Shown here: positions 17,537 to 38,900 of the stretch, piece after piece | Layout of the letters: the number at the start of each line of letters is the position of its first letter | Numbering within the stretch: position 1 is the first letter of the stretch | NCBI GenBank assembly: GCA_020536535.1 | Contig: JAHLWZ010000351.1 | Coordinates: 1 to 64,000, forward strand | Source: Pelomyxa schiedti | Lineage: Eukaryota; Protista; Evosea | Length of the DNA stretch: 64,000 nt | Direction of reading: 5' to 3' | Made by a program: the position numbers and the translations under genes | The notes under the pieces: generated by a model | Database searches by the model: none | What the model was told of the DNA's origin: nothing | What the model saw: the letters and a program-made list of their open reading frames with translations, nothing else

Positions 17537-18707
17537 TTTCGAAAGAAACGACCTCTCAAAAACTTTCCCAGAAACACAAAGACGAACGAAAACCACCGCA
17601 CCGGGTTATAAAATTGGTGCGCCCCTGGATACTTCGTAGACTCAACTTCAGTGTCAATTCGTACGACGATTGCAATTCGCGTGCAACGTCCGCGGGAATG
17701 AAATGAGAGGGAGGCGCCCAGTGACGTTGTATTTTTTCATTATTCCCCCACTAAACGGATGACGCGTGTTGGTATGCATGTATATTGTGCTTCCACACAA
17801 ACCTTCACACAATTCCACCGCATTGTCAACCAGGGTAAAGTTGTTTCCGCACCACAGTATCTATGGACTAACAACCGCAGAATTCATGGCACAACAATTA
17901 TCTGAGGAGTTTTTGTACACTTGTCCCGCGGGTCAGAAATTCAGAAATATTGCCAGCCCTATCCACAAAAATTTTGAGGCAGTGGCCCCAGCCAATGCGG
18001 AACCTCGGAATAGCAGTATTCGGGGCAGTTCATTGGGATCCCACAAGGACTGGACTGTAAAACAAGTAAGAGCAATCCCACACTCCAAATAGATAGCACA
18101 ATGTTCAACTCACATAGAAAGAATACGCCGGACCAGGCCCCACACCGAGAAACAAGTTCAGGTTGATTTAGCCCCATCAAGCCTTCTCGAAATTTTTTCC
18201 TTTCGACCCATCATACATCTTCAGGTGCAAATCTTGGGTTTAACAGATGGCGTGATATGACAAAACTCTGTGCAGTGGGTCTTGTCATGAAAGGACCCAT
18301 TATCCCAGGTCAATTTGCCGCAAGTGGGAAAATCATACACACGGCGTATGCCCCAAGAGGAGAAAAAAACAAAAATAAGATTCCTCGACGTAAAAACATC
18401 GCAGGGAAAAAAAGGTCAATGACCCCAAAGGCAACCCCCAAGCCTGGACCCTCACCCCCGAGCCCCCCAAAAGCACGAAACCCCAGGGTGAGTCCCAACC
18501 TGCTGATGTGGTTCCAAGAACGAGTCTTTTCCGCACCAGAGTCTCCTCAACACCCCAAAAGAAGTCAAAGAAAACCCGTCCGACGTGTCTCTTTTTGTGG
18601 GAAGACAAAATGGTGTGGAACGAAAAAATAATAAAGGGAAAAAAATGGATGTTTTTTCTTCTCCCAAATGGTACTACACGTGTCTTTCTTCATAGCATTT
18701 ATTACCC

Positions 18708-21700
18708 TCAACTGTCTGTTGGGGATGCATAGAGAGAGCTGTTTGTCATTCCACCTGTATTCTCGTATATTGGGTTGGTTGTGGTGCTTGATGCCGTGCC
18801 ATCCAACAATGAGTTGGGGATGTACCAGTTGGCTCCGTATCTGATGTGCTGTAATTTGAGGGGTATCAGTGTGATGCATACAGTCAACTCAAAAAAAAAA
18901 AAAACCTTGTATAGGAAGAAGCCAGCAACTGCTGCAGCGGCACAACCAATTGTTACTCCAATGATGGTCCCTGTGGCTATAAGAGAGTTTGTTGTAACTT
19001 GGGCATTGCATTTGGATGAATCCCAAACATCCCCTCCACAGTTGCCACAGGCATCATTTGTCTTGTTGTCATAACTTCCATCACATCCTATGCAAGAGGA
19101 GTTTCCATTGCAAATACCACACGCATCATATTCCTCCATTGAATTTGGAACTCCTGGCAACTGCGGTTTAGTACTGGAGGGAAAAGTACATTCCAAACTC
19201 TCTTACCATCACATCCCATGCAGGTAGAATTGTTGCCGCCGCAAATTCCGCAGGCATCCCACTGTTTCCCACTCCATAGTTTTGTGTCACAACCGATACA
19301 GGCGATGCCATCTCCACCACACACGCCGCATTGGTCATATGTCATTCCAGACCAGGCAGTCCCATCACATCCAACGCACATATTATCTCCTCCGCAGACA
19401 TTGCACCTGTTGCGGAGGGACCACAGGAGGAATTAGTCCAAAGGAATCGGAAAAGCTTTCACATACAAGTCATATTCAGCGCCGGACCAAGCAATGAAAT
19501 CACAGCCGAAGCAGAGATTGGTCTCGTTTGCCGTTAGGGGACAGTTTCCACACAAATCATACTGAAGATTCCCAGGTTTTCCGTCACAACCTAGGCATTG
19601 ATTTGTGCCACCACATATTCCACATTTATCAACTATCTTGAAGTGACTTGTAAGTGAGAAATCATACAGTTATTTCGGACATACAAGCATTGAAAATGGT
19701 ACGAAGTCACAACCGAGACATGTGTTGTTTCCAAGGCACACGCCACATTGATCATACTGGCTTCCAGACCATGGTACATTATCACAGCCTAGACATTCGT
19801 TGTCTCCACCACATACAAAACAGCTTAATCAGAAATTTAGACACAGAACAAGTGGGAAAAGGGATTATCAGGCATATACCGGTCGTATTTCTTGTTTGAG
19901 AATGGAACATAATCACAACCATAGCATGTATTGTTACCGCCACAGACTCCGCATTTATCATAGGGAAGATTTCCAGGTAGTCCATCACAGCCAATGCATT
20001 GATTTGAACCACCACAGATTCCACATTTATCCTCAACCTGTTCAAATGCTTAATCTAGTCGAAGGTATGGAATGGAAGCCGTACCACCCCTGAAAATGGT
20101 ACATAATCACAACCCAAACAGGTATTGTTCCCTGCGCAAACGCCACAGAAATCATAAGTCTGATAGGAGAATGGTACGTCGTCACATCCTACACACTCAT
20201 TGGTCCCTCCACATACTCCGCACCTGAAACTCTAATTCAGACAAGGCTGAGGAGAAAAAACGATACTTATCAATAGCCTTGCCAGAAAAAGGAATGTAAT
20301 CACATCCCAGGCAATCGTTCATGTATGTAGGGTCATCAGTGCAGTTTCCACACTCATCGTAAGCAAGGTTTCCTGGAAGTCCATCACATCCAATGCACTC
20401 GTTGGAGCCCCCACATATGCTGCATTTATCAACCACCTAGCTTTTTGTAAGGTACAAAAAAATACTGAAATTCGTTGACACACCAAGCCAGAGAAGGGCA
20501 CATTATCACAACCAAGGCAACTGTTGTTTCCAGCGCAGACACCACACTGGTCATAAGTCAGTGCGCTTGGTTTTCCATCACAGCCGAAGCACGAATTATG
20601 TCCACCACATTCACCACATTGGTCAACGGTTACATTTGAAAAAGGCTTTCCATCACACTGCACACAAGAATCATTTCCTGAGCAGATGCCACACTAACGG
20701 AGGAAATGAGAAGAAAAAGAAGATAGTCACCTACAAACCTGATCATAAACTTTCCCACTGAAGCAAACACCATCACAGCCAAAGGCTCGGTCCTCTCCAC
20801 CACATATTCCACAGTCATCCAGAACTTTTCACCTTTAGTTTTAACATAAAGAGAAAACAGGATACCCTTCCCACTGAACGGAACTTTGTCACAGCCCCAG
20901 CAGGCATTCGTCCCATCACAGACTCCGCACTGGATTTAATTTAGAAAAAGATTATAGATCAAAGAAAGAACCTCACCTCATCGTACTGTCTTCCAGAGTT
21001 TAGTATACCATCACATCCCATGCAGGATCTATTGAACTTTCAGATGGGAAAACTGAAAAAAAGAAAGAGCAGTACGAGCCATTGCCTCCACAGACTCCAC
21101 AGACATCAAATTGAATAGGATCCCAGATGACTCCATTGCACCCAAAGCATGCCCTATTTCCACCACAGATTCCACAAACGTCGTAAGTCTTTCCACTGTA
21201 AAGAACGCCATCACAGCCCACACAAGCATCAGTGCCAAGGCAAACATCACATTTGTCCACTTGTGCTCCACTCCACGGTTTTCCGTCACAGCCGATGCAC
21301 GCAAGCTCGGATGGATTATTCGTGCAGTCACCACATCTAACATAGGACACAATTTCAGTGGAGGTGAAAGAGAGAAAAAGGAGAGAAACGTGTCATAAAA
21401 CCAGCCAGAATTTGCTACGCCATCACATCCAACACAATCTTTTCAGGGTAAATAAGAGTAACCAGAATTAGTTAGAATTATGCACCATTTGCGCCTTGAC
21501 AAACACCGCATTTGTCAACTGTTGCTAGTGACCAAGGGATCCCTGCAAGAATATGAATGGGAGCATATACAGTAAGAAAAAGATGTACCATCACATCCAA
21601 CACAAGAGAGACCAGTTCCACCACACAGTCCACACTGGTCATACTGACGACCTGAGTATGCAACATGATCGCACCCAAAGCAAGAGTTCTGCACATACAG

Positions 21701-24700
21701 GTTGTTAATCTCGCCGCCAGTCATAATGGAAGTTACTTACATTTCCGTGGCAAACAGAACAGTTATCGTACACGGCCCCACTAAACGCCACGTTGTCACA
21801 CCCCACACAGTCGTTCATTTCAACATCGCCTGGTTGAACGCATTGACCGCATCGGTCATACACATATGGCCCATAAGGAATTCCCATGCAATCCTCGCAT
21901 GCGTTTGTACCCTGGCATACAGCTATGACATTTGATTGTTGTTTATTTTTGAGCGAGTGAGTTCACCATGGGGCGACAAATAAAGAAGCATACAGCAGTT
22001 GTCAAATGTAGCGTGGGACCACTTGATGCCATTGCACCCCAAGCATTCCAGGCCCGAACCACCACAAACACCGCACTGGTCATATGTCAACGGGGGGACA
22101 GTAGCACGCCCATCGCAGCCAATGCACCTTGATGTGTAGGTTTGGGTGTAAGAGTCAATAAGTTGCCAGGCTATACATTTACACTAGTACTACACAAACA
22201 GCCACAGCAAATAAAGGCACTTTTCCCACAAACGTACTTGTTTGTTCCGTTGCACACTCCGCACTTGTCCCAGCTTGCCTTCCCATAAGGCGTTCCGAAG
22301 CAATCAATGCACGACGTGCCGTTTCCCCCGCACACACCGCACTGGTCGTACTAGCAGACAAAGTTAGTGGTGAAGATCAGGATCAAGAAGAAGATCGATC
22401 GTGCAGGAAACACATACGGCGGCAGGGGGCACTGTGTAAAGGTAGTCACATCCCATGCACGCGTTGGTTCCACCACATACTCCGCAGTTGTCATTATGCT
22501 TGTTGCCATACGGAACCTGCTGGCAATCCAAACCTGATTGGTGAATGTGAGTGTTCTATGTGGAAGCCAACTGTGTGTGGCATCTACTTACTACTAGTAC
22601 TAGTAGTAAGTAGGACTGGGTGGCTACATACAGGCGTTTGTGCCGTTGCAGACTCCGCACAGGTCGTACCTGTTGTGTGACTGGTTGGTGATGGGAATAC
22701 AGAATGATGAATGGGGGATCACATTGCCATGACTGGGGTTCCAAAGCATCCGTAGCACGTGGAATTGTCGCCGCCGCACACTCCACATGCATCCACTTTG
22801 GCGTGGCCATTCAGGTTTCCGTAGCAATCCAGGCACGATGTCCCTGAGCCTCCACATATTCCGCATATATCCACCACTCTGATGTTCAAAAAAGGAGGAG
22901 TTGCAGTTAACTCTTAACTGTCAGAAGCTTATTTACTCACGTTATTCCGTAAGGAACACCCTTGCAATCCAAACATTGATTCGAATCCGCCAGTGTAACG
23001 CATATCTGACACTTGTCCATAATTTTCCCAGAGTTCACAACATGGTCGCAACCTTCGATTCCTCAGAATTATTCTATGATACATTATTTGCTTACCGTAA
23101 CAGGGGAATACACTATCCACTACAATGGTTGCAACACCCCATCCAAGGACATTCAAGTAAATCGTTGTATTATGTACGGCAGTTCTATGGCAATGTAAGT
23201 ACTAAGGTCATGTTTTCTAAGGCTACGTTGCAAGTAATTTCACATTGAAGATGTAGGTATTGTAGGGCGTTACACTTGTGTAAGTGGATGGAGAGATTGA
23301 CTGGACATAGCCGTATGTATCTGTAGCAACCACCATCTGAAGAGTGTTACTAATAAAACCTGGTGTAAGTAACTTACAGTTAGTGTTGAAGCAAGCACAC
23401 TAAGACCCTGCAAGATATAGGGGACAACATTGGAGCTATCTGATGCGATCAAAAACACATTCCCGTAGCTACATCAAAACGTTAGAAAAGCTGATTCCCT
23501 TGAGGACTGAATTACCCAAATGAAGTGATCAAAGAATTATACTGACTCATCACTGAGGTAGTATAGGAACCTCCATCGTTGATAATTCCAAACACAGGGT
23601 ATATGTTTGCGCCCTTGATGTGTGTAGTGAGAGTCGCCACAGAAGGATAGTCTTCGCCTTATGTACATGTAAGTGCACCCGAAAAAAAAACCTGAAGTAC
23701 CTGTGCCATAATACTGGCATTGATTAACTGTATTGCCAGCTGCATCTAAAATTACACCTACAGGATAGCACGGCGGAGTCATGCAATCATCCACGCAATC
23801 ATAGTTATTTGCTGGTAAATAGGCGAGAGATGTCTGTCCACTAGCAGCTTGACATTGATATTTGTTCTCTTGTGCATAATGGAAGTTGGCATCCGTTATT
23901 GTGAAAAACATCTAATAGGCAAAGGTAAGTTTTACAAGTGAGCACACTGACGGACCTTCAGGGAATTTGTTCTCCAGCCATACTTCCCCTGCATGTTGCA
24001 AGTTGCCTGCGCAAGCGGAACAAGTTGTGACTCGGGTCCATCATAGCCCCATCCAATCACAGTTTCCTGAGCGCTTATTAGTTCAAGCCGAAGAGGATGG
24101 AATGTGCTTACTGCCACTTTCGCCTGCAAGGCATTGTAACTATTCTGCAGGGGTGCTAGGGCCCAGAAGTCATTATCTACTGCTGCCATAGAACCCCAAT
24201 CCCCTGAGTACAGGACCGGCTTGTCTCCAAACGTGTTGTAGGCAAAATTGGCCTGAGGCCTAGAACTCCGGACTTGTGATATGATCCGCGGAATAAGCAT
24301 GGCAACCATTTGTACATCTGGTGTCATACTGCCCGTGATATCCTGTTTCCTGGTGATTTGAAATGCCATCTTTTGGGAAAGAACCTGACTGATCCAAAGA
24401 TCAAGAGACTGCAGCTCAGAAGGTGGTACATAAACACTGATTGGAACCGTAAGAGCTTGATTAGGCACAAGAAAAACTTCTGTTATTGCTGGATTGATCT
24501 ATGTGGCGTTGGGATTACGGTCATAAGGCATAGTAACAGGAACGAACAGGTGAGCCCGTTGTGTTCCACACAATCTGACTTTGTTGGTACCACCAAGTTC
24601 CATTTGAACAAGACCCAGAAGAAGGCCCTGAATTCCACATCAGGAAACAAAACAGACGCAGAAAAACCAATCCAGCACAGAGTCAGATAGACATACACAC

Positions 24701-24890
24701 CTGATGCAGTTCCAGCCATGCACTTTCCAGTTCCAGTGCACCACCCACACCCAGTCGTGGCCACGCAGGAAGTGCACACTCCGTATGTGCACGCTCCCAG
24801 CACCCCCACGGCTGCTCCCATAATTACAACTACAACCATCGCCGTAACCGCCATCGTAACCGACAAGGGTATCGCCCTCTGTGTAGGCAT
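18708..24890 (-). CDS. Integrin-beta-like type I membrane protein: signal peptide, PSI, beta-I/VWA domain, long Cys-rich stalk, TM, NPxY tail
   Basis: Signal peptide MPTQRAIPLSVTMAVTAMVVVV. PSI-like CTSCVATTGCGWC. Beta-I motifs DITGSM, FGDKP, DGPES, YGWR and TDANFHY. Many GCDG...DxCGxC repeats. TM IIGVTIGCAAAAVAGFFLY and cytoplasmic NPIY at 18765-18776. Confidence 0.85.
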
Positions 24891-25165
24891 GCCCTGTGCT
24901 TGTTCTGGAATCAAATCGAGTCGTTGGTTTTTTTGTTTGTTTTCCTTTTATTTTTTTTTTTTGTGTGCATGTACACAACGTTAGTTCCACAACGGGGATG
25001 AGCGGAAAAGCGTTAACTAAGTTCGGTACGATTCCATTCTTTTTCTTCCATCCGCATCTGGAATGCAAATCCAGATCGACGTTTCTGTACCTCTCGTGAA
25101 AACGGACGTGCACTACACACAAAAAAACCTGGTGTGAAGAACAAAAAAAAAACGAAACAAACCAC
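24891..25165. promoter_or_regulatory. Probable 275-bp bidirectional promoter shared by the two surface-receptor genes
   Basis: Divergent ATGs at 24890 (-) and 25166 (+), each giving a signal-peptide-like N-terminus. Confidence 0.5.
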
Positions 25166-28100
25166 ATGGCAAAGGGTAGGGGCACAAAGTTATACTATTC
25201 AACGTAGTGGTTAACATTAGTAAAACAAGAAGCGTTTCGACTTGTATTTGTGGTTCTGTGTGCAACATGCACTGTTGGCCTTCTGCCGTCTATATTCCTT
25301 GAGGCTGAGTATTGGACGTCGGCAGGTTCGTGGTCAAGAACTACTTCCACATCGGAGTGGGACTCTTGCGGCCAGTATATCTACACAACGACAAACGGCG
25401 GAACGGCGGTGACATACACTTTTTCCGTTTCACAGTAAGTGGGAGAATTTTCTGTTATGACACGTTGGTAAGCTTCACACCTCTCAAGAGCTGGAACATA
25501 CAATTTGTGGATACTTTCGAGAATTCCAAACAATCCGAAGGGTGCCTCACTCTGGGTTCAGTTTGATTCGGTGAGTAAATGAGTCCTTTCCTCCAGTTTT
25601 TGACTGTTCTCTTTTCAAGCAACCCAAAGTTGACTGGGACTTGTATATTTTTGGGAACTCTTGGAGGCAAGTCACAAATGTAACTCTATCGACTGGGAGC
25701 CATACTCTTGCCATCACAATGAGGTAAATGGGTTACAAAGAATACCATTCTTAACTTGGTTCAGAAAGTACTCTGCTCAGCTTCAAATGGATAAGATTCT
25801 GATCACGGATATGTCCACTCCCAAGATGGGTTACTCAAACAAAGGAAAGACAGCAGCTAATATTCCCTCTGGCTCTTATTGTATTGTCCCCTCATTTCTT
25901 CATCCCAAGCCCTAATATGTATTTCAGGTCAGCAAGTATATTTAGAAGTATGTCGACTCGAAATTGTTGCCCCCTATTATCTATCTGAACAACCACACAG
26001 GCGGAATTTGGGACAAACCCCGGATCACCTGTCACATTAGCAGGGCTTTCAACTGCCTCCATGTCCGGGGCACTGTACAAAAACGCAGCAACAACCACCA
26101 CTTGCAGCACTTCGTCCAATTACGTACAGGTAATTTTTGCTCCACTTGTGACATCACTAACGAATATTTAGTTCACAGTGACTTGGGGTGAGTCTGTGTA
26201 CAGGCCTGTTTGGTTCAGGGTCATGGCCCCTACGTCGTCGTACAATCAGTTCACAATTTATGTGTGTAGGCAACACCATTTTGCAAGTCTACACTGAGTC
26301 TCACCACAGAGCACAAATTGCGGAACGAATTATGGCACTCTGACTGTCTCCAAACCTTCACAAGAGTTTCAATGGGTCAACGTGCGTCCCCTCCTCTCCC
26401 AATTTCTGTATTGACGACGTGCAATGACTTTCTCGTCCAGTTTGGATCCCTTATCAACCTGCCCAACTCGTTCCTGGTGACGTTCGTCACAGGGTACACC
26501 TACCTCGACAAAATCTACATCGGTTGGGGAATTCCGCTCACCAACGGCTCCATCGCCAACCTCCCATCATCAAGTATGGATATTCCTCGAAAGACCATCA
26601 CACAACGCAACTTTTTTTTGACGAAACGACAGGTTCTTCTTGTAGCACGTACAATGGACTGTGCTCTCCCGTAACCACATGCAGCGCAGGGCCAACGTGC
26701 TCTGCTTGTCCCGTGGGCTATCAAGGCTGTGGCAACATCAACACCTGCAATCCGCCTTATGGGTGCGTCCGCACGGTGCCGTTCGGCTGCTACTTTGACA
26801 GAAGCGTGTCACAATTTGGCTATACCGACGTTGCTTCGTTCCCGACTGGCGCGAGCACGGTTGAATTATGGGCGTCGGCTGCGCCCTTCCTGGCGACTGG
26901 GGATTCATCTGTTATCTACTATCAGAGCTCCAGTGGGTCTTGGGTGTACCAAATTCGATACAATCCAAGTCTGGGTCTATATTTGTGTGTTATTTATTTC
27001 CCCATTCCAAGATCCATTTCCCTTTGGTTTTTTCAGTTTTTACTGTTTTACTGAGATTTTTTGCTTGGTTGTGTTACTGTTGTTGATGAATTCAAGGTAC
27101 AATGGTGGAACTGCAATTAAGCCATCAACTCCAATCATTCTTCCTTTGGATATCTGGACACATATTGCCGTGCGTTGCTCCATCTCACCATTGTATTGCG
27201 CCTGATGTGCGTTTTTTGGGCAGATAACCTATGACCTCTCCACAGCAAAGTTTTATGCGAATGGAGCTTTGGTCGCCACTGTTAGCACAAGTTCTGGTGC
27301 TCCGTCCTCTCCTGGTGTGATATCCTTGGGGAAGCCAGTTGGTGTGCCTTCATTCGTGTTTCCTCGAAAAACTTGATTTCTTACCTATACATCAAGCCAC
27401 ATGGTCAACAGACTTGACTCTACCTGCTTTTGGAATTGATGAACTGCGTATCTGGTCTGCAGTGCTCCCTCAAGCAACAATCCAACAAAATATGAATCAT
27501 ACACTCACAACAAGTCAGCCTAATCTAATGCGTATGTGATTACTCCTCCCAAGCTACATATAGAACTCTAACCCAACAAACAATAAAAAAAAAGATGTTT
27601 GGAGTTTTGGTGCCGATAATAGTAACCCTTGTCAACCAATAACCACTGAAACTTTTGGAACTGCAGCAATTACAACTTCACTCACAGAGTGTATGCAAGT
27701 TGAAGTTTACCTTTTTTTGATCTGAAAACAGGGTATTCTCTGCGAAATCTCTATATATCCACTGGCGGGCCAAATTGGAACATGCAAACCAGTTGGTTAA
27801 TTGGCCAACCATGCAGCGGGGCAAATCCTGTATGGTTTGGAATTGACTGCGATACATCAGGGAGTGGCCGCATTTCGACAATGTAAGTAGTATCTGTGGA
27901 ACAAGCGGGAATCTATGAATCTACCCACAATCCCAATAGAAACCTCGCCTACAACAATTTGGTTGGATCCTTACCTGCCAGCTTCTTTGCACCTTTTTCC
28001 AAGCTTTCTATTTTGTATAAAATATCATACCTCTCCCTTCATCTAATTAACTTTAAAACAGAATGCTGGATGATAATTCATTGACTGGACCCATCCCAAT

Positions 28101-31100
28101 GGATATTGGCTTTCTCACAAGTGCTGTTACAATGTACGTACGGGGTTCAGTTCCAAACTTTTCTGATGACATTTGTAGATTAATGCACAGCAACCAATTT
28201 ACCTCGATCCCAACGCAGATTTCACAAATGACATCTTTGCAAAAATTGTACTTTCTTCTGTCTTTTCTATCTTTTCTCATTACTCACTGTTTTAGGTACT
28301 TGCAATACAATCAGCTGTCGGGAACTATTCCAGATGTCTTTTCGACAATGACAGCACTGGTTTTTCTGTATATGTACAACAATTCTTTGACAGGAACAAT
28401 TCCAACTTCATTGAGCACCATCACATCCCTGAAATACCTGTAAGTTTTTGTTTTTTACATCCCCCTGGTTTTGCTAAAGCAACAATCACAGAGATTTGAG
28501 CTACAACCATCTTTCTGGTCAATTTCCACAGGCAATTATCAATAGCCAAATATCTTCCATGTAAATACTATGCCTTCATTTCACTTCGCAATAATCAAAT
28601 ATCCATAAGAAATGTTGCAGGAAACTACTTTTCTGGTCAGTTGCCCAACAGAGCCACAACTGTCAATTCCCAAATGATTTTAATGTACAGTTTCCACTTG
28701 GCTGTTATGTATATTAACAATGGATACCACCACAGGAACTTCACAGACAATGTGTTTACTTGTGAAGTGCCACCCTTCTTCACATTGTCTTCCACAACAT
28801 TCCCTGTCGATGTTCACGGCAGTCTCTTCTTTTGTCCCATAACCAATGTTGTGCAGACCATTCAAGGGATTGCTTGCCGTATGTTCTCCCATGATGATCT
28901 TTTCGTTCTGAGCATAACTTTCAGAACCTGTTACAATGATATCTATTACACCCAACAGTTGGGACTTGTCAGTTGGTTTTGGATCCAAGCCCACTGCCAC
29001 AATCAATGCAACAGGCCTGAACGGGTGCACAGGAATACAAATATTTGTCCCTGGTGTTGGGCTAGTTGCACCAAAAAGTCAAACAACAAACACGCTGGTG
29101 TTTTCAATTCCCTCTCACACTTATGGGATTGTTCCCATCCGGCTCGTGTGGACCGGCACCTACGGCAACAACTCTGTGGTGTCAGCCAACTCACTCAACT
29201 TCAAGTACTATTATCCTTGCCCAGCCTCGTGTGTGTCTCCATATGGGTCCTGTGCTGGACTGAGCGGCCTTTGTGTTTGTAATGGAACACATGGAGGTTA
29301 TACTTTGCCAACAGTGACGTAACACTCACAGAACATAGGGTCTGACTGCCATGGTTGGTCATGCCCCGCAAACTGCAACGGGCGAGGGACATGCAACACA
29401 ACAACTGGAGTTTGTATTTGCACCCCGCCTTATTTTGGCACCTCGTGCAGTGCAGCTCAAATTGCCTGCCCAAACAACTGTTCCAAGTAAATTTCCGTCC
29501 AAAACAGTATCTTTAGAGTTGTAATACTTCCCCTTGAAGGCACGGGCAGTGCAATATTTTCACAGGGGTATGCTCTTGTTATCTTGGTTACTGGGGAAAC
29601 AACTGTGCGAACAAAACATGTCCCCCAAACAACCTTCCCTACTGCACTCCACCACACGGCTGGTGCAATGGCACTTCTGGGAAATGTGTTTGCGCATCTG
29701 GTTGGCTTGGAGCTTCTTGCTCAACACCTGCGAAATCATGCCCTGCCAACTGCACCAATCCAAACTATGGACAGTGCAACCCATCCACTGGTATGCTTCA
29801 AATTAGAAATTAGTTTGTCTCTTTACTTATCAATTCAAAACAAATCAAACAGGGGAATGCACGTGCTTCACATATCAAGGGCTTATCCACGGTGGGCTCA
29901 ACTGTAGTCAAATCATTTGCTCTCCTTCCTGCTTGAATGGTGGCACATGCAACACATCTTCCAGCAAGTGCATTTGCAAACCTAACTACTATGGGACTGA
30001 TTGCTCCGTGCCCAACTTTCCTTGTCCAAAGAATTGCACCAGTTCCAGCAGTGGCGAGTGTAATTCTCAAACAGGCAATTGCTCTTGCCGCTCAGGCCTG
30101 ACGGTAATCACATACAAAGTATTCCCGTCCCTTCAAATTAACTCACCTCGTTCACAGGGCTCAGATTGCTCCATTCACATTTGTCCTGGCACTCCTCAGT
30201 GCAACTCCCCAAATGGAACCTGCAACACAACTGATGGAACGTGCATATGTAGCAGCTTTCCAAGCAAAGGATACTACTTCAATGGGTATATGTGTCAGTA
30301 CAAATACTATTACTGCCCGGGCAGCCCTGAATGCAGCGGTAGCACTCATGGCAGTTGCAATCCTCAAACTGGAAACTGCATGTGTAACTACCCTTGGACT
30401 GCTTCTCTAAATTGTTCGAGTGCTGTCTGTCCCAATAGCTGCTGGGGGCACGGTTCGACTTCAAAAATCCCTTTCTGTATGTCTTGAGCGGTTTACAGTT
30501 TGCAGGTACATGCAATTCTGCCAACGGAAAGTGCATCTGTTGGGAACAGTACAACACCACAGTTGACTGCGAGTTGCTCTACAGTGTGTATTGAACTTTT
30601 TCGTCCCAATAATTCTCACCTCCCTTCACTGCACTTCACTTCACTTTACGATGGTCCAGTTCCATGTTCCCAACCGTGCAACCATGGTTACTGTAATACA
30701 CAGACTGGAATCTGTGTTTGCACATCACCATGGACCAGCACAACATTGGAGCAGTGCAACACTCTGTCTTGTCCTGGAGACTGTAATGGAGGAGTTACTG
30801 GGACTTGCGTGAATGGCACCTGCATCTGTCATACAGGCATTCCAAACCCTGATGTAATCACATTTCCATTCTTAACCTCGAAACAGGATGGACTGGTACT
30901 CAGTGCACCATTCAGAACTTGACATGTGCTGGAGATTGCAGTCCCCCTTATGGACGGTTTGTTGCTCCCTGCACCAGCACCTCCGAGTGCGTCGTTGACT
31001 TATACTCAGGTGTGACACAACAACAGGACTCTGTGGGTGTTACGGTTCTAGCTATGGTTCCAATTGCCAATACAGTATGACACTCACGTCCCATTTATAT

Positions 31101-34100
31101 GAAGCTTCTCACGGAATTGCTAGAATACTGTCTCAGTAACTGTAGTACCCATGGCACCTGTAATATTACGACTGGTGTGTGCAATTGCTCTTCTGGGTGG
31201 CAACCACCGGATTGTTTTGCAAACTTGTGCTCTGATCTGAATTTCTGCACCTCAAGCTACAACGGAAATTGCAACACTACGAGCGGTGTTTGTGTGTGCA
31301 ACAGTGAGTTCTATGGCTTGGAGTGTCAGTACAAGTCGTGTCCTGCAAACTGCTCATTCCATGGCGTGTGCAATAATGCAACGTTTGTTTCGACGTTAAA
31401 GTGGTTGGGTTGTAACACTCACTCAAACATTAGGGGATTGTGCTCCTGCTATTCAGACTACCTTGGCGCCGTATTATTATCCCCTCTTGAGTTCTTCCAT
31501 TTTCTCAGTTTATTCAGATATGTGACGAGTTCTCTGCTGTTTGCCCACCATCTCGTTCTAACGGGTGTTTTGGAAACGGTGTGTGCAACCACACAACAGG
31601 GATGTGCACGTGCTATCCTGGTTTCTTTGGTGCTGAATGCAATTACAGTGTGCAAAAGTTTTAATAAAAACCTCCTCAGTAACCTCGGCACAGCATACTG
31701 CCCAAACAACTGCTCTGGCCACGGAGCGTGCAACTACACAAGTGGTGTTTGCTCTTGTGCTCAGAATTACTCGGATCCCAGCAATCCAGCTTGCAGTGCT
31801 GTTTACTATGCCTGCCCGTATGTTCTTTCATGGCGGCTGGGGGTTGAATTAATCTTCGGGCAGGGATAACCTTTGCTCGGGGAATGGTTATTGCAAGCAC
31901 TCCACTGGTCAGTGCGAATGCTACTCCGGTTTCCACGGGAACGTATGTCAGTACAAGAAGTGCCCTGCAAACTGTTTGGAGCATGGATCGTGTAACGCGG
32001 TATGCCAACCATGAAATCATCTCTGCTGTTCTGTTCTGATTTTGGGGGCAGACAACCGGGGAATGTGTGTGCCAGCCACATTGGCTTGGAGTTTCTTGCT
32101 TGGAAGCCAACTGTAAGTTATCTCGTTCTGAGACTTCTTGTTTATCAACTCTTCCGGCAGATTCGTGCCCCGGCAATTGCTTTGGGACTCATGGATATTG
32201 TGATAAACTGACTGGTCAATGCACATGTTACCAACCCTTTTTGGCTCCTAACTGCCAGTATGGTACGTTCCCACAACCGTGCAATGTATTATTCTAAAGA
32301 AAACGATGAAAGCAACCTGCCTTTTCAACTGTTCCTATCCACATGGTGTCTGCAACAAGTGAGTCGTCCATGATGGATTTTTTATTTCCTTCCATAAGAA
32401 TCCTTATGAATTACTCTTATAGTTTGACTGGCGTGTGTGCATGCAACAGTTCATTTGCTGGAAAGGGTTGCCAGATCGCTAACTTCACGTGCCACCCAAG
32501 TTGCATCAATGGAAATTGCTATTCACTGTATGAGTTTTTGCCAATCAACCCAGAAAGCACCAACAAAATCCCTTCTTTTATTAGGACTGGACAATGCATA
32601 TGCAATGCAATGTATTATGGTCAGGCATGCCAGTACAAGCAATGCCCTGGGAAAACTCCTTGTTCTGGAAACGGTGTATGCAACAACACCACTGGTGTTT
32701 GTGACTGCTCCACCAACTTCACAGGAGTTTCATGTGACATCCCAAACTGTATGCGCCAATAACACAAGACCCATTGCCGCCTCTCAAATTCGTTTGCACA
32801 TAGACAAGTGCCCCAATAACTGCAGTGGTACACATGGACACTGTGACCCGAACAAAGGTCAATGCATCTGTTATTCTCCCTGGACTCTTCCAGACTGTCT
32901 TGAAGGTAAGAACTGGAGAAATATATAACTATCATCCACTCATTCGTTCTGGTTTAGGAAGTTGTCAGTTAAACTGTTCTTACCCGCACGGCGTTTGCAA
33001 CACGTTTGTTTTCCTCGCTTACGTTACTTATTATGTGGTTACACCTTCATTTGTATATTTAAACAGTTCGACGGCTGTTTGCACTTGTGCTCAGAATTAT
33101 ATTGGCAAAAGCTGTCAGATTGCCAACTTCACTTGCCACCCAGCGTGTCTGAATGGGACATGCAATACTCTGTGTGTAAAATACGCTGTTGTTCGTGGTT
33201 TTCATTGACCCCTTTGTGGCATAGGGTCGGAAAGTGCATATGCAATGGCGGGTATTGGGGAGATATTTGCCAATATAAAACCTGTCCCACAAATTGCCAG
33301 ATTCATGGAGTCTGCAACAACGTATTAAATACATTTTATGAGCATTTCTTCCTGCCAACTTGATACTCCAGTTCACTGGAATATGCCATTGCAGCCAGAA
33401 TTGGACTGGTGCTAATTGCATGGAGGCAAACTGTATGTGATATCTCGAAAATCAATGAGGCAACGCTCAAATGATGTCCATCTCTTCAGATTCTTGCCCG
33501 AAGAACTGCTATGGGTCCCGTGGGCATTGTGACGCGACATCTGGCAAATGTTCTTGCTATTCTCCATGGACTCTTCCCGCATGTGAATTTGGTACTTTTT
33601 CCTTTCCTTCCATCCATTCATTTCAACTCACGAGTGCCCACACATACATAAGCTACCTGCACACTCAATTGCTCATATCCAAATGGGGTCTGTAACATGT
33701 ATGCATTTATTATGATTTCGAGTATCTCCTTCTCTTACGCACAAACTCTTAAAGACACACTGGAGTTTGCAAGTGTGAACCAGATTGGACAGGAAAAGGC
33801 TGTCAGATACTGAATCTGACATGCTCCCCTCCGTGTATAAATGGTGCTTGTGATTCAGGGTATGGATGGAATCTTTTTGCGTGACCAATTTTCTCTGACT
33901 TCATGCAGAACTGGAAAGTGTGTATGTCAAGCCGGGTACTTTGGGGACACCTGCTTGTACAAACAAGTGTGTTCGAGTTTTTTTTTACTGTTGGAATCTC
34001 CAACTCAACAGCTCACAGTGCGGAGGTAAAACCCCATGTTCCAGCCATGGTATATGCAATAATCTCACTGGAACTTGTTCGTGTGATCCCCACTACGACG

Positions 34101-35106
34101 GGAACTACTGTGAAATTCCTGATTGTTTGTCAACGATTATCATCTCTCCATTGTCAGTTAATTTCTTTCAGTTCCTTGTCCTAATAACTGCACGAGTGCT
34201 TCCCGTGGATCCTGCAATACTCAAACAGTTAGTATAAACTGTGATTATCCCAACATAACACACTTAACAGGGACAGTGCCTATGCCGCTATCCCTACTAC
34301 GGAACAAACTGTTCGCTGAGTAAGGCTTCATTTCCTTTCCTTTTCCTGGCCGTTCCTAAAACTTTTCCAGTGAAATGTCCCAACAACTGCAGAGGGCATG
34401 GAATCTGCAATTCTACAAACGGTGTTTGTATCTGCAACTCTCCGTACCTGCCCCCGGATTGCTATTTCAGTTTGTATCCCGTTCTCCACCTTCCATTTTC
34501 CCATAACCACACACATTAAAATCAACCAGTGTCTTGCCCGCTTAATTGTTCTGGTCATGGAACCTGCAATCCATTCACCGGCAAATGCACGTGCAAACCC
34601 TCTACCGAGTGGACAGGGCTCAACTGTTCCATCAGTAACAAACTCCCCTCCTTTTCTCTCCCCTTATCTTAATGCATCTTGCATCTTCTATGACATTCAT
34701 CATTACCATCCACACCCAACCCAACTGAGCACACTTTCGCACGCCAACACAACTTTCCCGCAGTCTGTTATCTACTATCTGATATCTACTAATATCCTCA
34801 CCCACTCATTCACTCACAGGAGAGTGCCCCAACAGCTGCAGCAACGCAGGGAAGTGCAACCAAGCGACGGGCAAATGCAATTGCCACACGGGGGCCAAGG
34901 GCTCCGACTGCTCGGGCGAGAACTGGTGGATCATCGTCGTGTGCGCCGGAGGCGGCACGGCCCTCGTGGTCGGCGGCGCCACGGCCGGCTTCGTGGCGGT
35001 GCGCCAGATGCGGATCAACAACGCGCGGTCCAGGCGCGCCAAGAACTCCGCGAGCTACGTGGACATGGACCCCTTGTCTGCTAGCGGTGGGGCGGGCACT
35101 CATTGA
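25166..35106 (+). CDS. Giant single-pass surface protein: CBM-like, LamG/ConA-like, plant-type LRR, IPT/TIG, more than 25 tenascin-type EGF repeats, TM, short tail
   Basis: A 45-nt intron (25176-25220) gives MAKVKQEAFRLVFVVLCATCTVG. LamG motifs WTHIAV..YANG and IDELRIW. LRRs LAYNNLVGSLP and LQYNQLSGTIP. IPT-like ISITP...FKYY. Repeated CPxNCSxHGxCNxxTGxCxC. TM WWIIVVCAGGGTALVVGGATAGFVAV; stop at 35106. Confidence 0.85.
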
Positions 35107-35961: not shown

Positions 35962-38900
35962 TTAGCTTTGCAGAATTCGTATTATTTTACTGATTGGGGG
36001 TCTCCCTTCAGACTCAAACACCCAACACTCACGCATCACTTCAAGTGCCCAGGGTGGGCATTCCCAGGCTTGGCCAGTGCAGTGCCATTCAGCCGTTTCT
36101 GGTGAATGTAGTAATTCATATGCCTGTTTGGAAAGTAGGTCAGCTCTTGCTTGCCGGATGGATTCTTGTTCATTCCCAGGTGTAGTGGTGCTTGAACCCG
36201 TTGATGCTGATGTTGCCGGCTGCTCAGGAGTTGGTGCTGGTGGTTGTGGTTGCACGTGGCCGGCGGCTATGGCCGATTTTACGGCATCGCGCTTCATTTC
36301 GTAGCGTTCTGTGTGTGCAATGAGCTTGCAGTAGGTTCCGGACCTCCGCAGGTGATCGTAGGGTTCTGTGAACGGGTCTACAATGCCGCGGCAGAGGGTA
36401 CCGAAATTCCACACGTCGGTGCCTAAGTCACTTTGTGGTTGCATTCTACAGGTTTCTGGCGCCCACAGTTGAATTGGTAGGTCGCGCAGGAGGCATTCTT
36501 GCATTCCTGCACTGACTTGGATATCGGCGAGTCCAAAATCCGCAATCTGAGGGCCAGTGAGATAAATGTATGTAAAAGTGGTGGCCAGATTAACCTTGGC
36601 CCATGGTCCGGCTTCTTGGTTGAGTGAACATATAAATACATTTCCTGTGTAAACAGCGTGTTAGGGCACGTTGTCAAGAGAAAAGAGAAGGAAGAAACCA
36701 GGGTGCAAGTCGCTGTGCTTCAAAGGGGGCTTTTGGCTGTGCAGGTGGAAAAGACCTTTGGCTGCATCCAAAAGAATCTTTTTCCTAAGTGACATTGGTA
36801 ACACTACTTCCATCATTTCGCGTTTCATTGACAATATTTCTGAATCGCTGTATGGCAGTGGTGAAGATGGTATTGTGGCTCTCTTTACCATCTCTTCAAT
36901 TTTATGTGAAATCCTTCTGAGAACTTTGCCGTACAAGTGGCTGAGATCTGGTCTGGTGAGTGATGTCACTCCAAGAAACAGATGCAAGCCTTCTGGAATG
37001 GTGGGGCGAACAAACTCCATATACATGGATATTGGAAGGAGGCTGACACCATAAAACCGAACAATGTTTTCGTTCTTCTTAAGACTGCTCATGACTCTAG
37101 CCTCGTGGAGAAATTCGCCAAGATCGGAGCTGTTCCCAGAAGAAATGTGCGGAATCTTGACAGCAATCATTTTACCCTTATACACAGCTCTCATTACTTT
37201 CCCGAAAGAGCCGGAGACGGATGAAATCTCTTTTCTCTTGCCAGAAGATGCGGAAAGAACAGAGTCAGCTGTCAAAGAGAAAGTTGGAGGGAAGGTGGAA
37301 GCTGGTGATTCACTTTGAATGGATACTGGGGAAATTGAGGCAATTGGCGCATCATCCAGGCCACAGGTGATCTTCTCTGAAGTCAGATTTTCTGTCTCTT
37401 TGAAATTCGTGAACAATGTAACCTCTTTTGGGTCTATAATTGGAAGGCTCTCCATGGCAATGTCTGGTGCTGCCGCAGAGACAGTGCCTGTATGCCCAAA
37501 TTTGCAGTGTAAAGAGCCGCTAGAACATATGGCATCAACACACTCCCGTAAACTGAACAGATGTGTGGAATAATCCGTTGGGTTAAAAATGGATTCCATT
37601 ATGGGATTCAGGGATGTTGTTGTTGAGTGTGAATGGTGAAGTAAATTGGTTCCCGTCATCAAGCAGCCGGGGCATGCGACCCATTCAACAGCTGCTTTCT
37701 TCATGGCAGAATTGCACATAGATAAAAAGCAATTGATTACACACACGATTTGAGTGATGAGCGGAACTGAAGAAGATGCTGGGGTCAGAAGAGTAGCAGT
37801 AGATTTCAGCATGTTGTTGGAGGTCTGTGCAGTCGCCACATCCAAGCCTCTTGGCAACTCAGATATCCAAACTTGAACAACAAGACATTTACTTTCCTTG
37901 TCTAGGGTGATAAGAGCCACGTGTTTCGCAGTTCCACACAGCAGACTGGCTGAGAGGTGTGACTTGCTCGCCTTAACTTCTTCGAGTTGCGGAATTCCCA
38001 TTATGCGAATCTGTAACCTAAAGTATGATCAAAAAAAAACCTTAGAATCTCTTTGTTTAGAAACCTTGGAAAGAAGACAACCGGAATGAACTCAAACTTA
38101 TATACTCTGCCTGCGATAGAAACAGGGGTAAAGCTCAGTACCGGAGCGGCAATAGGAGCCGCAGGGAGTCTTAAAGGTATTAAAACCCTCTGATTGTTCA
38201 ATTTGTATGCTACTTCAAAACTGAGAAGCAACTGGAGCAAAGTCTCGTGCATTGATTTATCACCAAACAACTTTTCATTGAATACATTATGAAGATCAGT
38301 CATCTTCAAAACGGCGTTGTCCTCCCAGGATGAAGAATCACAGTTGTTAACCACAGTTTTCACAATTTCCAGTATAAACTCGTGTCGCAGGACGACAATA
38401 TCTGAGAGTGATTGGGTGATCCCTGTATGAATAAGATGACCACTTCTAAAGTGTATAATCATCCCGCTATCGGCAAGGAAGTTGGCACAACTCAGAAGTT
38501 CCATTTCAAAGTTCTCCTTTTCATGCTGTGAGCAGGTAGAGCTTGCGCCACCACTTCCAATTCCATTAGCTGAGGCAATAGAGCTAAATTCACTCCATTG
38601 CAATATGTTGGTGTGACCACGAATTTCTCCAAGACTGTTGTAAAGTGCAACCCACTTTGGCGGAACATGGATGGGCTTGATAATCCCCTCAATGTGTTGC
38701 GCCAACATGTCAATGCACTTAGCGGATGGCTGAACAAGGGGTTGATCAATCAGGCCGCCAGTGCCTTTGGATGTCATGGCAAAAATAGCAGAGAACTTGA
38801 AAGATGGAAATTTTTCAAACATAAGGCGACCGATATTTAGAAGTGCTTCAAAGGCGGATTTCCTGTCCTCTCCATATGATTCCAAGTGCGTGCCCATCAA

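What the first reader, a model, noticed from the sequence alone, without database searches (positions are those of the whole stretch)
24483..35106. Head-to-head partner of the integrin beta is a LamG-LRR-IPT-EGF giant, not an integrin alpha
Seen: the start codons are 275 bp apart and divergent. Both products are secreted single-pass proteins with long Cys-rich stalks of broadly similar residue count. Both have small-residue-rich TM helices (GVTIGCAAAAVAG and GGGTALVVGGATAG, GxxxG-like). The partner shows no FG-GAP repeats or GFFKR motif and has a short tail with a single Tyr (SYVDM). Established: integrin betas work as alpha/beta heterodimers, and GxxxG motifs drive TM pairing. Inference: a co-regulated non-canonical heterodimer in which a lectin/LRR receptor replaces the alpha subunit.
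Basis: inference. Interest (0 to 1): 0.75.

Follow-up and report, generated by a model that had tools for sequence, protein, structure and literature searches.

The report
Integrin beta and lectin-receptor gene pair
In the anaerobic amoeba Pelomyxa schiedti every integrin-beta gene I could find sits next to a gene for a giant lectin/LRR/EGF surface protein, and the two have been copied together as a unit; this points to a shared job, but nothing shows that the neighbour replaces the missing alpha chain.

Summary
The window is from Pelomyxa schiedti (GCA_020536535.1). An integrin-beta gene (minus strand, ATG 24890) and a gene of about 2,100-2,200 residues (plus strand, ATG 25166) diverge from a 275-bp spacer. 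The second gene reads: signal peptide, two unassigned beta-rich modules, LamG, LRR, an IPT-like domain, about 36 EGF modules, one TM helix and a short tail.

The pairing is not a one-off. The three other beta paralogues I could fetch each have a LamG-LRR-EGF neighbour of 2,037-2,075 residues. Two are head-to-head (443 and 467 bp). One is in tandem 3.5 kb downstream. Beta and partner trees agree, and flanking genes differ, so the pair was duplicated as a cassette long ago.

An earlier agent of this scan (s1-396606) had already noted such pairing on other DNA of this genome. Its claim of length matching is not borne out by my four pairs.

A preprint notes, in passing, a "tenascin" ORF beside ITGB in Mastigamoeba, which also has canonical alpha genes.

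The "alpha-replacing heterodimer" reading stays untested. No FG-GAP or GFFKR was found. The partner's TM stays conserved where its beta's TM and tail were swapped. RNA data were too thin to measure co-expression. I could not check whether P. schiedti has an alpha gene.

The parts
18708..24890 (-). Integrin-beta gene (about 30 exons, roughly 1,400-1,590 aa depending on the local model): signal peptide, PSI, betaI head, CGxCGG-repeat stalk, TM, NPIY tail
   Evidence: Head exon matches P. schiedti P0001 (E 2e-30, 59% id) and P0004. Both pass the Pfam Integrin_beta threshold. Local homology-guided model.
23516..24498 (-). betaI (VWA) head exons with MIDAS-position motif D-I-T-G-S (LDLWISQ|DITGSM across a small in-frame intron)
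   Evidence: and alignment A1. The same D-x-T-x-S variant is tabulated for Mastigamoeba ITGB.
19199..22910 (-). Beta stalk: about 30-35 modules of the CGxCGG...CxGC type, about 950 aa
18909..18983 (-). Beta TM helix LIATGTIIGVTIGCAAAAVAGFFLY; followed by GFFLYK/HIRYGANWYIPN and NPIY (18765-18776)
   Evidence: TM and juxtamembrane segment conserved in L001, L003 and both Mastigamoeba betas.
24891..25165 (.). 275-bp spacer between the two start codons; presumed bidirectional promoter
   Evidence: No k-mer of 8 or more is shared by all three head-to-head spacers.
25166..35106 (+). Partner gene (about 45-50 exons, about 2,100-2,200 aa): single-pass LamG-LRR-IPT-like-EGF receptor
   Evidence: Paralogues annotated at 2,075, 2,037 and 2,063 aa.
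25176..25220 (+). 45-nt first intron that removes the in-frame TAG at 25205; exon 1 is 25166-25175
   Evidence: The paralogues also have a short first exon.
25221..26572 (+). Signal peptide, then two beta-rich modules that each open with an (L)EAEY/AE(F/Y) motif; no Pfam family assigned. The carbohydrate-binding look is my reading only.
   Evidence: no Pfam hit. 55-58% identical to the L001 partner.
26635..27512 (+). Cys-rich linker plus Laminin_G_3 (concanavalin-A-like) domain
   Evidence: Weak Pfam hit on a window exon. Laminin_G_3 on the full-length paralogues: unmarked on L001 and L002, weak on L003.
27597..28877 (+). LRRNT-like cap, about 8 plant-type LRRs (one per exon) and a C-terminal Cys cap
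   Evidence: Pfam LRR_1, LRR_4, LRR_8. LRRNT_2 on the L003 exon, below its cut-off. Exon-per-repeat layout.
28927..29240 (+). IPT/TIG-like Ig-fold domain
   Evidence: AF2 model pLDDT 67. Best Foldseek matches are EBF1/3, plexin A1/A2 and MET IPT domains, E about 1e-2. No Pfam or PDB sequence hit.
29241..34920 (+). About 36 tenascin/teneurin-type EGF modules
   Evidence: Pfam EGF_2, EGF_TEN, DUF7949. 215 Cys / 6 in the local model.
34921..35016 (+). Conserved juxtamembrane and TM segment NWWIIVVCAGGGTALVVGGATAGFVAVRQMRI
   Evidence: 62% identical to both the L001 and L002 partners, against 32-56% for the other segments versus L002.
35017..35103 (+). Short basic tail with a single Tyr in SYVDM (35053-35067). 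It fits YxxPhi and YxxM patterns; shared with L001 (SSYVDMD), not L002.
24550..24597 (+). GT-AG intron of a plus-strand RNA contig lying inside beta's 5' exons
   Evidence: One single-cell RNA contig, depth 4.3 (joint 24547/24596)
25452..25501 (-). GT-AG intron (read on the minus strand) of an RNA contig lying inside the partner's 5' region
   Evidence: One single-cell RNA contig, depth 7 (joint 25451/25502)

Best explanation
Shown: the locus is one copy of an old two-gene cassette. One gene is an integrin beta. The other is a LamG/LRR/IPT-like/EGF single-pass receptor. The cassette has been duplicated as a unit at least three times in Pelomyxa schiedti and has stayed linked while everything around it changed.

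Inferred, step 1: in three copies the genes share a short divergent spacer, so they are probably switched on together.

Inferred, step 2: the two products work in the same surface process, either adhesion to substrate or capture of prey. The partner would supply ligand recognition through its lectin-like head held on a long EGF stalk. Its cytoplasmic tail is short and has no domain the tools could assign. Beta would supply the link to the cytoskeleton through its NPxY tail.

Inferred, step 3: they most likely meet in cis through their ectodomains, as receptor and co-receptor. This is a looser relation than an obligate alpha/beta heterodimer.
For: Linkage at four loci.
- Window: 275 bp, head-to-head.
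- L001: beta P0001 beside a 2,075-aa LamG/LRR/EGF_TEN gene, head-to-head, 467 bp.
- L002: beta P0004 beside a 2,037-aa one, head-to-head, 443 bp.
- L003: beta-like P0029 with a 2,063-aa one 3.5 kb downstream on the same strand, with a CXC-domain gene between.

Age and mode of duplication.
- Flanking genes differ at every locus.
- Protein identities are only 28-49% for both genes.
- Both trees give ((window, L001), L002) with L003 outside. Support is 100/98 and 99/99 for beta and 87/82 for the partner.

Constraint on the partner.
- Exon layout is conserved, with one LRR per exon.
- All domains are conserved, and the juxtamembrane/TM segment is the best-conserved part against L002.

Complementary tails: beta has NPIY and NSSLY, while the partner has a 34-residue basic tail.

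Literature.
- A 'tenascin' ORF is adjacent to ITGB on a Mastigamoeba balamuthi scaffold.
- In Variosea, 'Type II' ITGBs carry LamG3 and EGF-like domains in the same chain as the beta head. This is a Rosetta-stone-type hint; homology to the partner's domains was not tested.
- Dictyostelium tgrB1/tgrC1 is a head-to-head, shared-promoter pair of single-pass IPT/TIG proteins that bind each other (PMC13648343).

RNA: contigs from the same single-cell libraries lie on the 5' parts of both genes.
Against: - There is no direct evidence of co-expression or of binding.
- The four pairs descend from one ancestral pair, so they are not four independent observations. Linkage could persist by inertia.
- The RNA contigs are few, of low depth and partly unspliced, and the run tables warn that DNA may be present in those libraries.
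- No motif is shared by the three divergent spacers.
- No conserved RGD, LDV or KGD occurs in the partners.
- The size of the partner family in the genome is unknown. Members without a beta neighbour may exist.
- The Mastigamoeba 'tenascin' ORF was not shown to be an orthologue of the partner.
Confidence: 0.4

Rival explanations
1. One reading: the partner is the obligate heterodimeric mate of beta. It takes the place of integrin alpha, with head-head contact and TM-TM packing through small-residue motifs.
For: - The pairing is conserved and co-duplicated.
- Both are type-I proteins with very long modular stalks of comparable size.
- Both TM helices are rich in Gly/Ala small-xxx-small patterns.
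- The partner TM is strongly conserved.
- Many amoebozoans are reported to have beta without alpha.
- I found no alpha gene in the window or in any fetched locus.
Against: - The partner has no FG-GAP propeller, no Ig-type legs and no GFFKR.
- Mastigamoeba is reported to have two canonical ITGA genes as well as a tenascin-like ORF next to ITGB.
- At L002 the beta chain has an unrelated TM and a PDE tail, yet its partner keeps the family's TM motif.
- Both membrane-proximal segments are basic, so no charge clasp is possible.
- Partner length is nearly constant (2,037-2,075 aa annotated) while the beta stalk from the end of the head to the TM varies from about 790 to 1,300 aa.
- The L003 pair is no longer divergent.
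Confidence: 0.12
2. Receptor and membrane-bound ligand acting in trans, as in Dictyostelium TgrB1/TgrC1. Beta on one membrane would bind the LamG/EGF partner on another cell or another part of the same giant cell. Each duplicated pair would be a separate matching set for cell-cell contact or self-recognition.
For: - Head-to-head, shared-spacer pairs that duplicate as units are the hallmark of the Tgr system in another amoebozoan (PMC13648343).
- LamG and EGF modules are typical integrin-ligand modules (discussion in 10.1101/2020.04.29.069435).
- Heads of paralogous pairs have diverged strongly and in parallel.
Against: - No conserved RGD, LDV or KGD motif.
- Only five single-base differences between the assembly and its DNA run across 6 kb. 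By position against my exon model, two lie in or beside the spacer and three in partner introns, so there is no sign of the hyper-polymorphism of recognition loci.
- I know of no report of aggregation or kin discrimination in Pelomyxa.
- The partner has one IPT-like domain, not the IPT array of Tgr proteins.
Confidence: 0.18
3. Linkage without functional coupling. Two unrelated adhesion or recognition receptors happened to be neighbours in an ancestor, were copied together by segmental duplication, and have simply not yet been separated. Each works on its own, with beta pairing with an alpha encoded elsewhere or acting alone.
For: - All pairs derive from one ancestral adjacency.
- The genome is compact, with many short spacers (39-296 bp between neighbours in L002), so a divergent neighbour is ordinary in itself.
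- One pair has already been rearranged.
- No spacer motif is shared.
- There is no expression or interaction evidence.
Against: - The duplications are old (28-49% identity) and all other synteny is gone, yet the two genes stay within 3.5 kb in four of four cases and keep the divergent layout in three.
- A similar adjacency is reported for Mastigamoeba.
- LamG/EGF fused to beta in Variosea points to a functional tie.
Confidence: 0.25

Closest known systems
Amoebozoan integrin beta (ITGB 'Type I' of Kang et al., bioRxiv 10.1101/2020.04.29.069435), e.g. Mastigamoeba balamuthi ITGB
   Same: PSI plus betaI head with a D-x-T-x-S MIDAS variant, the long CGxCGGxxxxCxGC stalk, one TM helix and an NPxY tail. 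The TM and juxtamembrane segment GFF(L/I)YK(R/H)..GANW(Y/F)IPN is shared with both Mastigamoeba proteins.
   Different: That work treats the neighbouring 'tenascin' ORF only as a check against contamination. It does not describe a conserved, co-duplicated gene pair. Pelomyxa appears in its list of data sets but not in its integrin tables.
Integrin alpha subunit
   Same: Type-I single-pass protein with a long ectodomain, a small-residue-rich TM helix and a short basic tail. It is encoded where one might look for beta's mate.
   Different: No FG-GAP beta-propeller, no thigh/calf Ig legs and no GFFKR. The head is made of unassigned beta-rich modules, LamG, LRR and an IPT-like domain, and the stalk is EGF.
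Dictyostelium tgrB1/tgrC1 head-to-head receptor-ligand pair
   Same: An amoebozoan pair of single-pass adhesion genes transcribed divergently from a shared promoter, duplicated as pairs, whose products bind each other (PMC13648343). The partner here also has an IPT/TIG-like domain.
   Different: Tgr proteins are two paralogous IPT/TIG-array proteins. Here the two genes are unrelated families (integrin beta versus LamG-LRR-EGF), and no polymorphism or binding is shown.
Animal LamG/EGF or LRR/EGF/LamG adhesion proteins (Crumbs, neurexin, Slit) and tenascin/teneurin EGF arrays
   Same: The same domain vocabulary: Laminin_G, LRR and EGF_TEN-type EGF repeats. As in Crumbs and neurexin, there is a single TM helix with a short tail.
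   Different: The domain order differs: unassigned modules, LamG, LRR, IPT-like, then about 36 EGF. There are no FN3, fibrinogen globe, YD-shell or PDZ-binding end. The resemblance is at domain level only, and orthology was not tested.
Variosean 'Type II' ITGB with LamG3 and EGF-like domains in the beta chain (Kang et al. preprint)
   Same: An integrin-beta head is combined with LamG3 and EGF modules.
   Different: There the modules are in one polypeptide. Here they are on a separate neighbouring gene. Whether the LamG domains are homologous was not tested.

Membership tests
Integrin beta (the minus-strand gene) | betaI/VWA domain recognised by Pfam Integrin_beta (PF00362) | tested here: met
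   The window head exon alone gives no Pfam hit. It matches P0001 at E 2e-30 and P0004 at E 1.7e-10, which score 76 and 82 bits against a cut-off of 24.8. This is membership by homology.
Integrin beta (the minus-strand gene) | MIDAS DxSxS motif at the start of the betaI domain | tested here: inconclusive
   The window has D-I-T-G-S, with Thr in place of the first Ser, as do P0001 and the Mastigamoeba proteins. P0004 has the canonical D-S-S-A-S and P0029 the degenerate D-Q-S-Y-F. Metal binding was not tested.
Integrin beta (the minus-strand gene) | Single TM helix followed by an NPxY tail motif | tested here: met
   TM at 18909-18983 and NPIY at 18765-18776.
Integrin beta (the minus-strand gene) | Forms a heterodimer with an alpha subunit | not testable with these tools
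   No way here to scan the P. schiedti genome for FG-GAP genes or to predict complexes.
Integrin alpha (candidate identity of the partner) | N-terminal seven-bladed FG-GAP beta-propeller | tested here: not met
   No FG-GAP hit in any window exon piece, nor among the listed precomputed Pfam hits of the three full-length paralogues (those lists are truncated with '+N more'). The fold of the first ~300 residues was not determined.
Integrin alpha (candidate identity of the partner) | Membrane-proximal GFFKR motif | tested here: not met
   The partner has GF(V/L/M)A(V/I)RQ(M/F)RI. A GFFLYK(R/H) string occurs instead in the beta chains.
Integrin alpha (candidate identity of the partner) | Ig-like thigh/calf legs | tested here: not met
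   The stalk is about 36 EGF modules.
Tenascin / teneurin | EGF_TEN-type EGF array | tested here: met
   EGF_TEN and EGF_Teneurin hits on window exons (below the whole-family cut-off) and on the paralogues.
Tenascin / teneurin | FN3 repeats plus fibrinogen globe (tenascin), or NHL/YD-shell/Tox-GHH (teneurin) | tested here: not met
   None among the Pfam hits. The partner is type I with an N-terminal head, unlike the type II teneurins.
Tgr-type head-to-head receptor-ligand pair | Divergent gene pair with a shared spacer, duplicated as pairs | tested here: met
Tgr-type head-to-head receptor-ligand pair | Both members are IPT/TIG-array proteins that bind each other and are highly polymorphic | tested here: not met
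   The two members are unrelated families. The partner has one IPT-like domain only. There are few differences between assembly and DNA run. Binding is not testable here.

The most novel reading that the evidence does not exclude
Archamoebae use a new kind of integrin complex. The beta chain pairs obligately with the LamG/LRR/IPT-like/EGF protein encoded beside it, either instead of or besides a propeller-type alpha. This would answer what 'alpha-less' integrin betas of protists work with.
Probability: 0.12. Interest if true: 0.85.

Novelty: new variant of a known kind. Interest (0 to 1): 0.55.

Why it matters
Integrin betas are now known in many protists. Several lineages seem to have beta without alpha, or alpha without beta, and nobody knows what such lone chains pair with. 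A companion gene that has stayed glued to beta through at least three ancient duplications, and perhaps since before Pelomyxa and Mastigamoeba split, is a concrete and testable candidate for a functional partner. It also offers a second amoebozoan example, after tgrB1/tgrC1, of surface-receptor genes evolving as head-to-head cassettes. If the link turns out to be only positional, the case still corrects the public annotation: these betas are named 'exocyst complex subunit 4'.

Tried and rejected
- Word-index protein searches with single exons gave nothing: beta head and the IPT/EGF alignment A2. The length filter excludes full-length spliced proteins, so these blanks say little.
- Looking up beta-like hits P0005, P0007 and P0026 for genomic context failed because no gene positions are on record. 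Mastigamoeba synteny therefore could not be checked directly.
- P0039, P0017 and P0023 turned out to be irrelevant. The first is an intron-free assembly of another organism. The others look like prokaryotic VWA proteins with PEP-CTERM or phage-like neighbours.
- The metagenome scan with the beta-head alignment found only two contigs of about 1.9 kb from a Pelomyxa-like organism, plus stalk-motif matches. None was long enough for synteny.
- Two tries to fetch the window's own annotated gene models through neighbouring ORFs failed.
- RNA: only single-cell RNA contigs exist, they cover about 6-7% of the 6-kb stretch and are partly unspliced, so no co-expression estimate was possible.
- A 10-mer (ACGTCCGTTT) is shared by the window and L001 spacers. 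I expect about 0.2 such matches by chance and it is absent from L002, so I rejected it as evidence.
- P0050 (FG-GAP_2 plus CGxCGG repeats, from a metagenome) was considered as a seed for an alpha search. It has only one FG-GAP stretch, so I dropped it.
- My first codon-bias gene models were poor. They were replaced by models trained on this gene's own exons and by homology-guided ones.


Full report
**What the window is.** The region has many short ORFs broken by 40-110-nt GT-AG introns. The beta head exon matches two proteins of Pelomyxa schiedti, assembly GCA_020536535.1. DNA runs of one study hold 96-97% of the stretch. Earlier notes of this scan name the same organism. The genome comes from single-cell genomics (PMC8887013).

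**The beta gene.** On the minus strand an ATG at 24890 opens a signal peptide and a PSI-like Cys pattern. The following exons encode a betaI head, and a stalk of about 30-35 CGxCGG...CxGC modules follows. The gene ends with the TM helix LIATGTIIGVTIGCAAAAVAGFFLY and a tail with NPIY and NSSLY, with the stop at 18708-18710.
- The head exon finds P0001 (E 2e-30, 59% identity) and P0004 among 1.84 billion representatives. Both pass the Pfam Integrin_beta threshold.
- The MIDAS position reads D-I-T-G-S, the same D-x-T-x-S variant tabulated for Mastigamoeba ITGB.
- Integrin betas of this build are already described for Amoebozoa (10.1101/2020.04.29.069435).

**The partner gene.** On the plus strand the ATG at 25166 is followed by an in-frame TAG at 25205. 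A 45-nt GT-AG intron (25176-25220) removes it and yields the signal peptide MAKVKQEAFRLVFVVLCATCTVG. The paralogues have the same mini first exon. Local gene models give this order:
- two beta-rich modules that open with (L)EAEY, with no Pfam assignment;
- a Cys-rich linker and LamG;
- an LRRNT-like cap and about eight plant-type LRRs, one per exon;
- a Cys cap;
- an Ig-like domain;
- about 36 EGF modules (215 Cys / 6);
- the segment NWWIIVVCAGGGTALVVGGATAGFVAVRQMRI;
- a short basic tail with one Tyr, in SYVDM.

Domain evidence is uneven. Pfam finds LRR and EGF families on window exons, and Laminin_G_3 only weakly. The full-length paralogues carry precomputed Laminin_G_3, LRR and EGF_TEN hits. 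The IPT call rests on an AF2 model (pLDDT 67). Its best Foldseek matches are consistently IPT/TIG domains of EBF, plexin and MET, at weak E values. No FG-GAP and no GFFKR were found. My models are approximate: the true length is about 2,100-2,200 aa, and the different models gave 2,010 to 2,589.

**Is the pairing more than chance?** A divergent neighbour means little in this compact genome, where spacers of 39-296 bp are common. The decisive point is repetition. I found three further P. schiedti beta-family genes and fetched their surroundings.
- P0001 (1,368 aa) has a 2,075-aa LamG/LRR/EGF_TEN gene head-to-head at 467 bp.
- P0004 (2,194 aa) has a 2,037-aa one head-to-head at 443 bp.
- The divergent P0029 (1,307 aa) has a 2,063-aa one 3.5 kb downstream on the same strand, with an unrelated CXC-domain gene between them.

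Nothing else is shared between the loci. Head identities for beta are 49% (window-L001), 39-47% (to L002) and 28-33% (to L003). For the partner's first 900 residues they are 49%, 32% and 29-33%. Maximum-likelihood trees give ((window, L001), L002) with L003 outside for both genes. Support is 100/98 and 99/99 for beta and 87/82 for the partner, though with four taxa the agreement alone has a one-in-three chance. The simplest history is one ancestral pair copied as a unit at least three times, long ago. The four pairs are therefore not independent observations. What counts is that linkage survived while all other synteny decayed.

**Other species.** I could not test this directly.
- Mastigamoeba proteins P0007 and P0026 have no genomic record in the collection.
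- Exon-sized queries found nothing.
- The metagenome scan gave only two short Pelomyxa-like beta contigs.
- The preprint of Kang et al. states that a 'tenascin' ORF lies next to ITGB on M. balamuthi scaffold CBKX010020318.1 and a PA14 ORF on CBKX010020319.1. It used them only to rule out contamination.
- The same work reports two canonical ITGA genes in M. balamuthi and 'Type II' ITGBs of Variosea that carry LamG3 and EGF-like domains within the beta chain. Read as a domain-fusion hint, this favours a functional tie between a beta head and LamG/EGF modules. I did not test whether the domains are homologous.

**Does the partner replace alpha?** The evidence leans against the strict form of this idea.
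- The partner fails every defining feature of alpha except a small-residue-rich TM helix.
- If the Mastigamoeba tenascin-like ORF is its orthologue, companion and alpha coexist there.
- At L002 the beta chain has an unrelated TM (IGVIIAISLIVVLLILSTGFLAIV) and a cytoplasmic 3',5'-cyclic-nucleotide phosphodiesterase domain (E 1e-63) in place of the NPxY tail. Its partner still keeps NWWIIVVCACGG...VGG...RQFRI. So the partner's striking TM conservation (62% against 32-56% for the other segments versus L002) is not explained by packing against the family's beta TM.
- Both membrane-proximal segments are basic.
- Annotated partner lengths are nearly constant, while the beta stalk from the end of the head to the TM ranges from about 790 to 1,300 aa.

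**Expression.** Only two single-cell RNA libraries hold parts of the stretch. Their contigs lie on the 5' parts of both genes in the same libraries. They are shallow (depth 2-7) and partly unspliced, and the tool warns that DNA may be present.
- One contig has a plus-strand GT-AG intron (24550-24597) inside beta's 5' exons.
- Another has a minus-strand GT-AG intron (25452-25501) inside the partner's 5' region.

This suggests that transcription from each side runs into the other gene, as long leaders or as antisense RNAs. It is not a measure of co-expression.

**Reading.**
- Shown: an old, co-duplicated integrin-beta / LamG-LRR-EGF receptor cassette, intact at this locus.
- Inferred: shared control through the common spacer, and cooperation of the two products at the cell surface. 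I favour a cis receptor/co-receptor relation at 0.4. The partner would recognise ligands, perhaps glycans, and beta would couple to talin-type adaptors.

Noticed in passing
L002:10001-19296 (protein P0004, residues 1940-2170): One P. schiedti integrin-beta paralogue (2,194 aa) has a different TM helix and carries a cytoplasmic 3',5'-cyclic-nucleotide phosphodiesterase domain (PDEase_I, E 1e-63) instead of the NPxY tail. That makes it a receptor-type PDE on an integrin-beta ectodomain. About 570 residues between the stalk and the TM are unassigned.
   Followed up: partly
L001, L002, L003 (proteins P0001, P0004, P0029): The public annotation names all three P. schiedti integrin-beta proteins 'exocyst complex subunit 4', which is a mis-annotation. 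The window's own beta did not appear among annotated proteins of 1,207-3,840 aa, so its public model may be missing or split.
   Followed up: partly
window 24460-24741 and 25419-25635: Two low-depth single-cell RNA contigs are spliced in the sense opposite to the gene they lie on (introns 24550-24597 on plus, 25452-25501 on minus). Divergent transcription may overlap by more than 1 kb, or there may be antisense RNAs at both 5' ends.
   Followed up: partly
window 18906-18923 and P0001, P0007, P0026: The beta chains, not the partner, carry a GFF(L/I)YK(R/H) string at the inner membrane border, reminiscent of the GFFKR motif of animal alpha chains. It is followed by a conserved GANW(Y/F)IPN shared between Pelomyxa and Mastigamoeba.
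   Followed up: no
window 15608-17596 (-) and L003:809-9708: The 663-codon ORF just downstream of the window's beta has a weak ankyrin match and is homologous (23-26% identity, E 1e-27 to 1e-43) to four tandem genes just upstream of the L003 beta. This is a second family that recurs next to beta genes, but it may simply be a large family.
   Followed up: partly
window 35962-40388 (-): Downstream of the partner lies a ROCO-type gene (COR-A domain plus Tyr/Ser-Thr kinase exons). Further on there are SAM-domain and ankyrin-repeat genes (43640-46470).
   Followed up: no
L005:8942-10063, L006, L007:7716-8870: Short (373-384 aa) Integrin_beta/VWA-type proteins occur in what look like prokaryotic contexts: one with a PEP-CTERM sorting signal beside exosortase genes, the other in a dense co-directional, phage-like gene block.
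   Followed up: no
L008, L009 (metagenome contigs Ga0307352_102520, Ga0307336_102952): Two environmental contigs of about 1.9 kb encode an intron-containing beta head 57-58% identical to P0001, so a close Pelomyxa relative is present in those samples.
   Followed up: no
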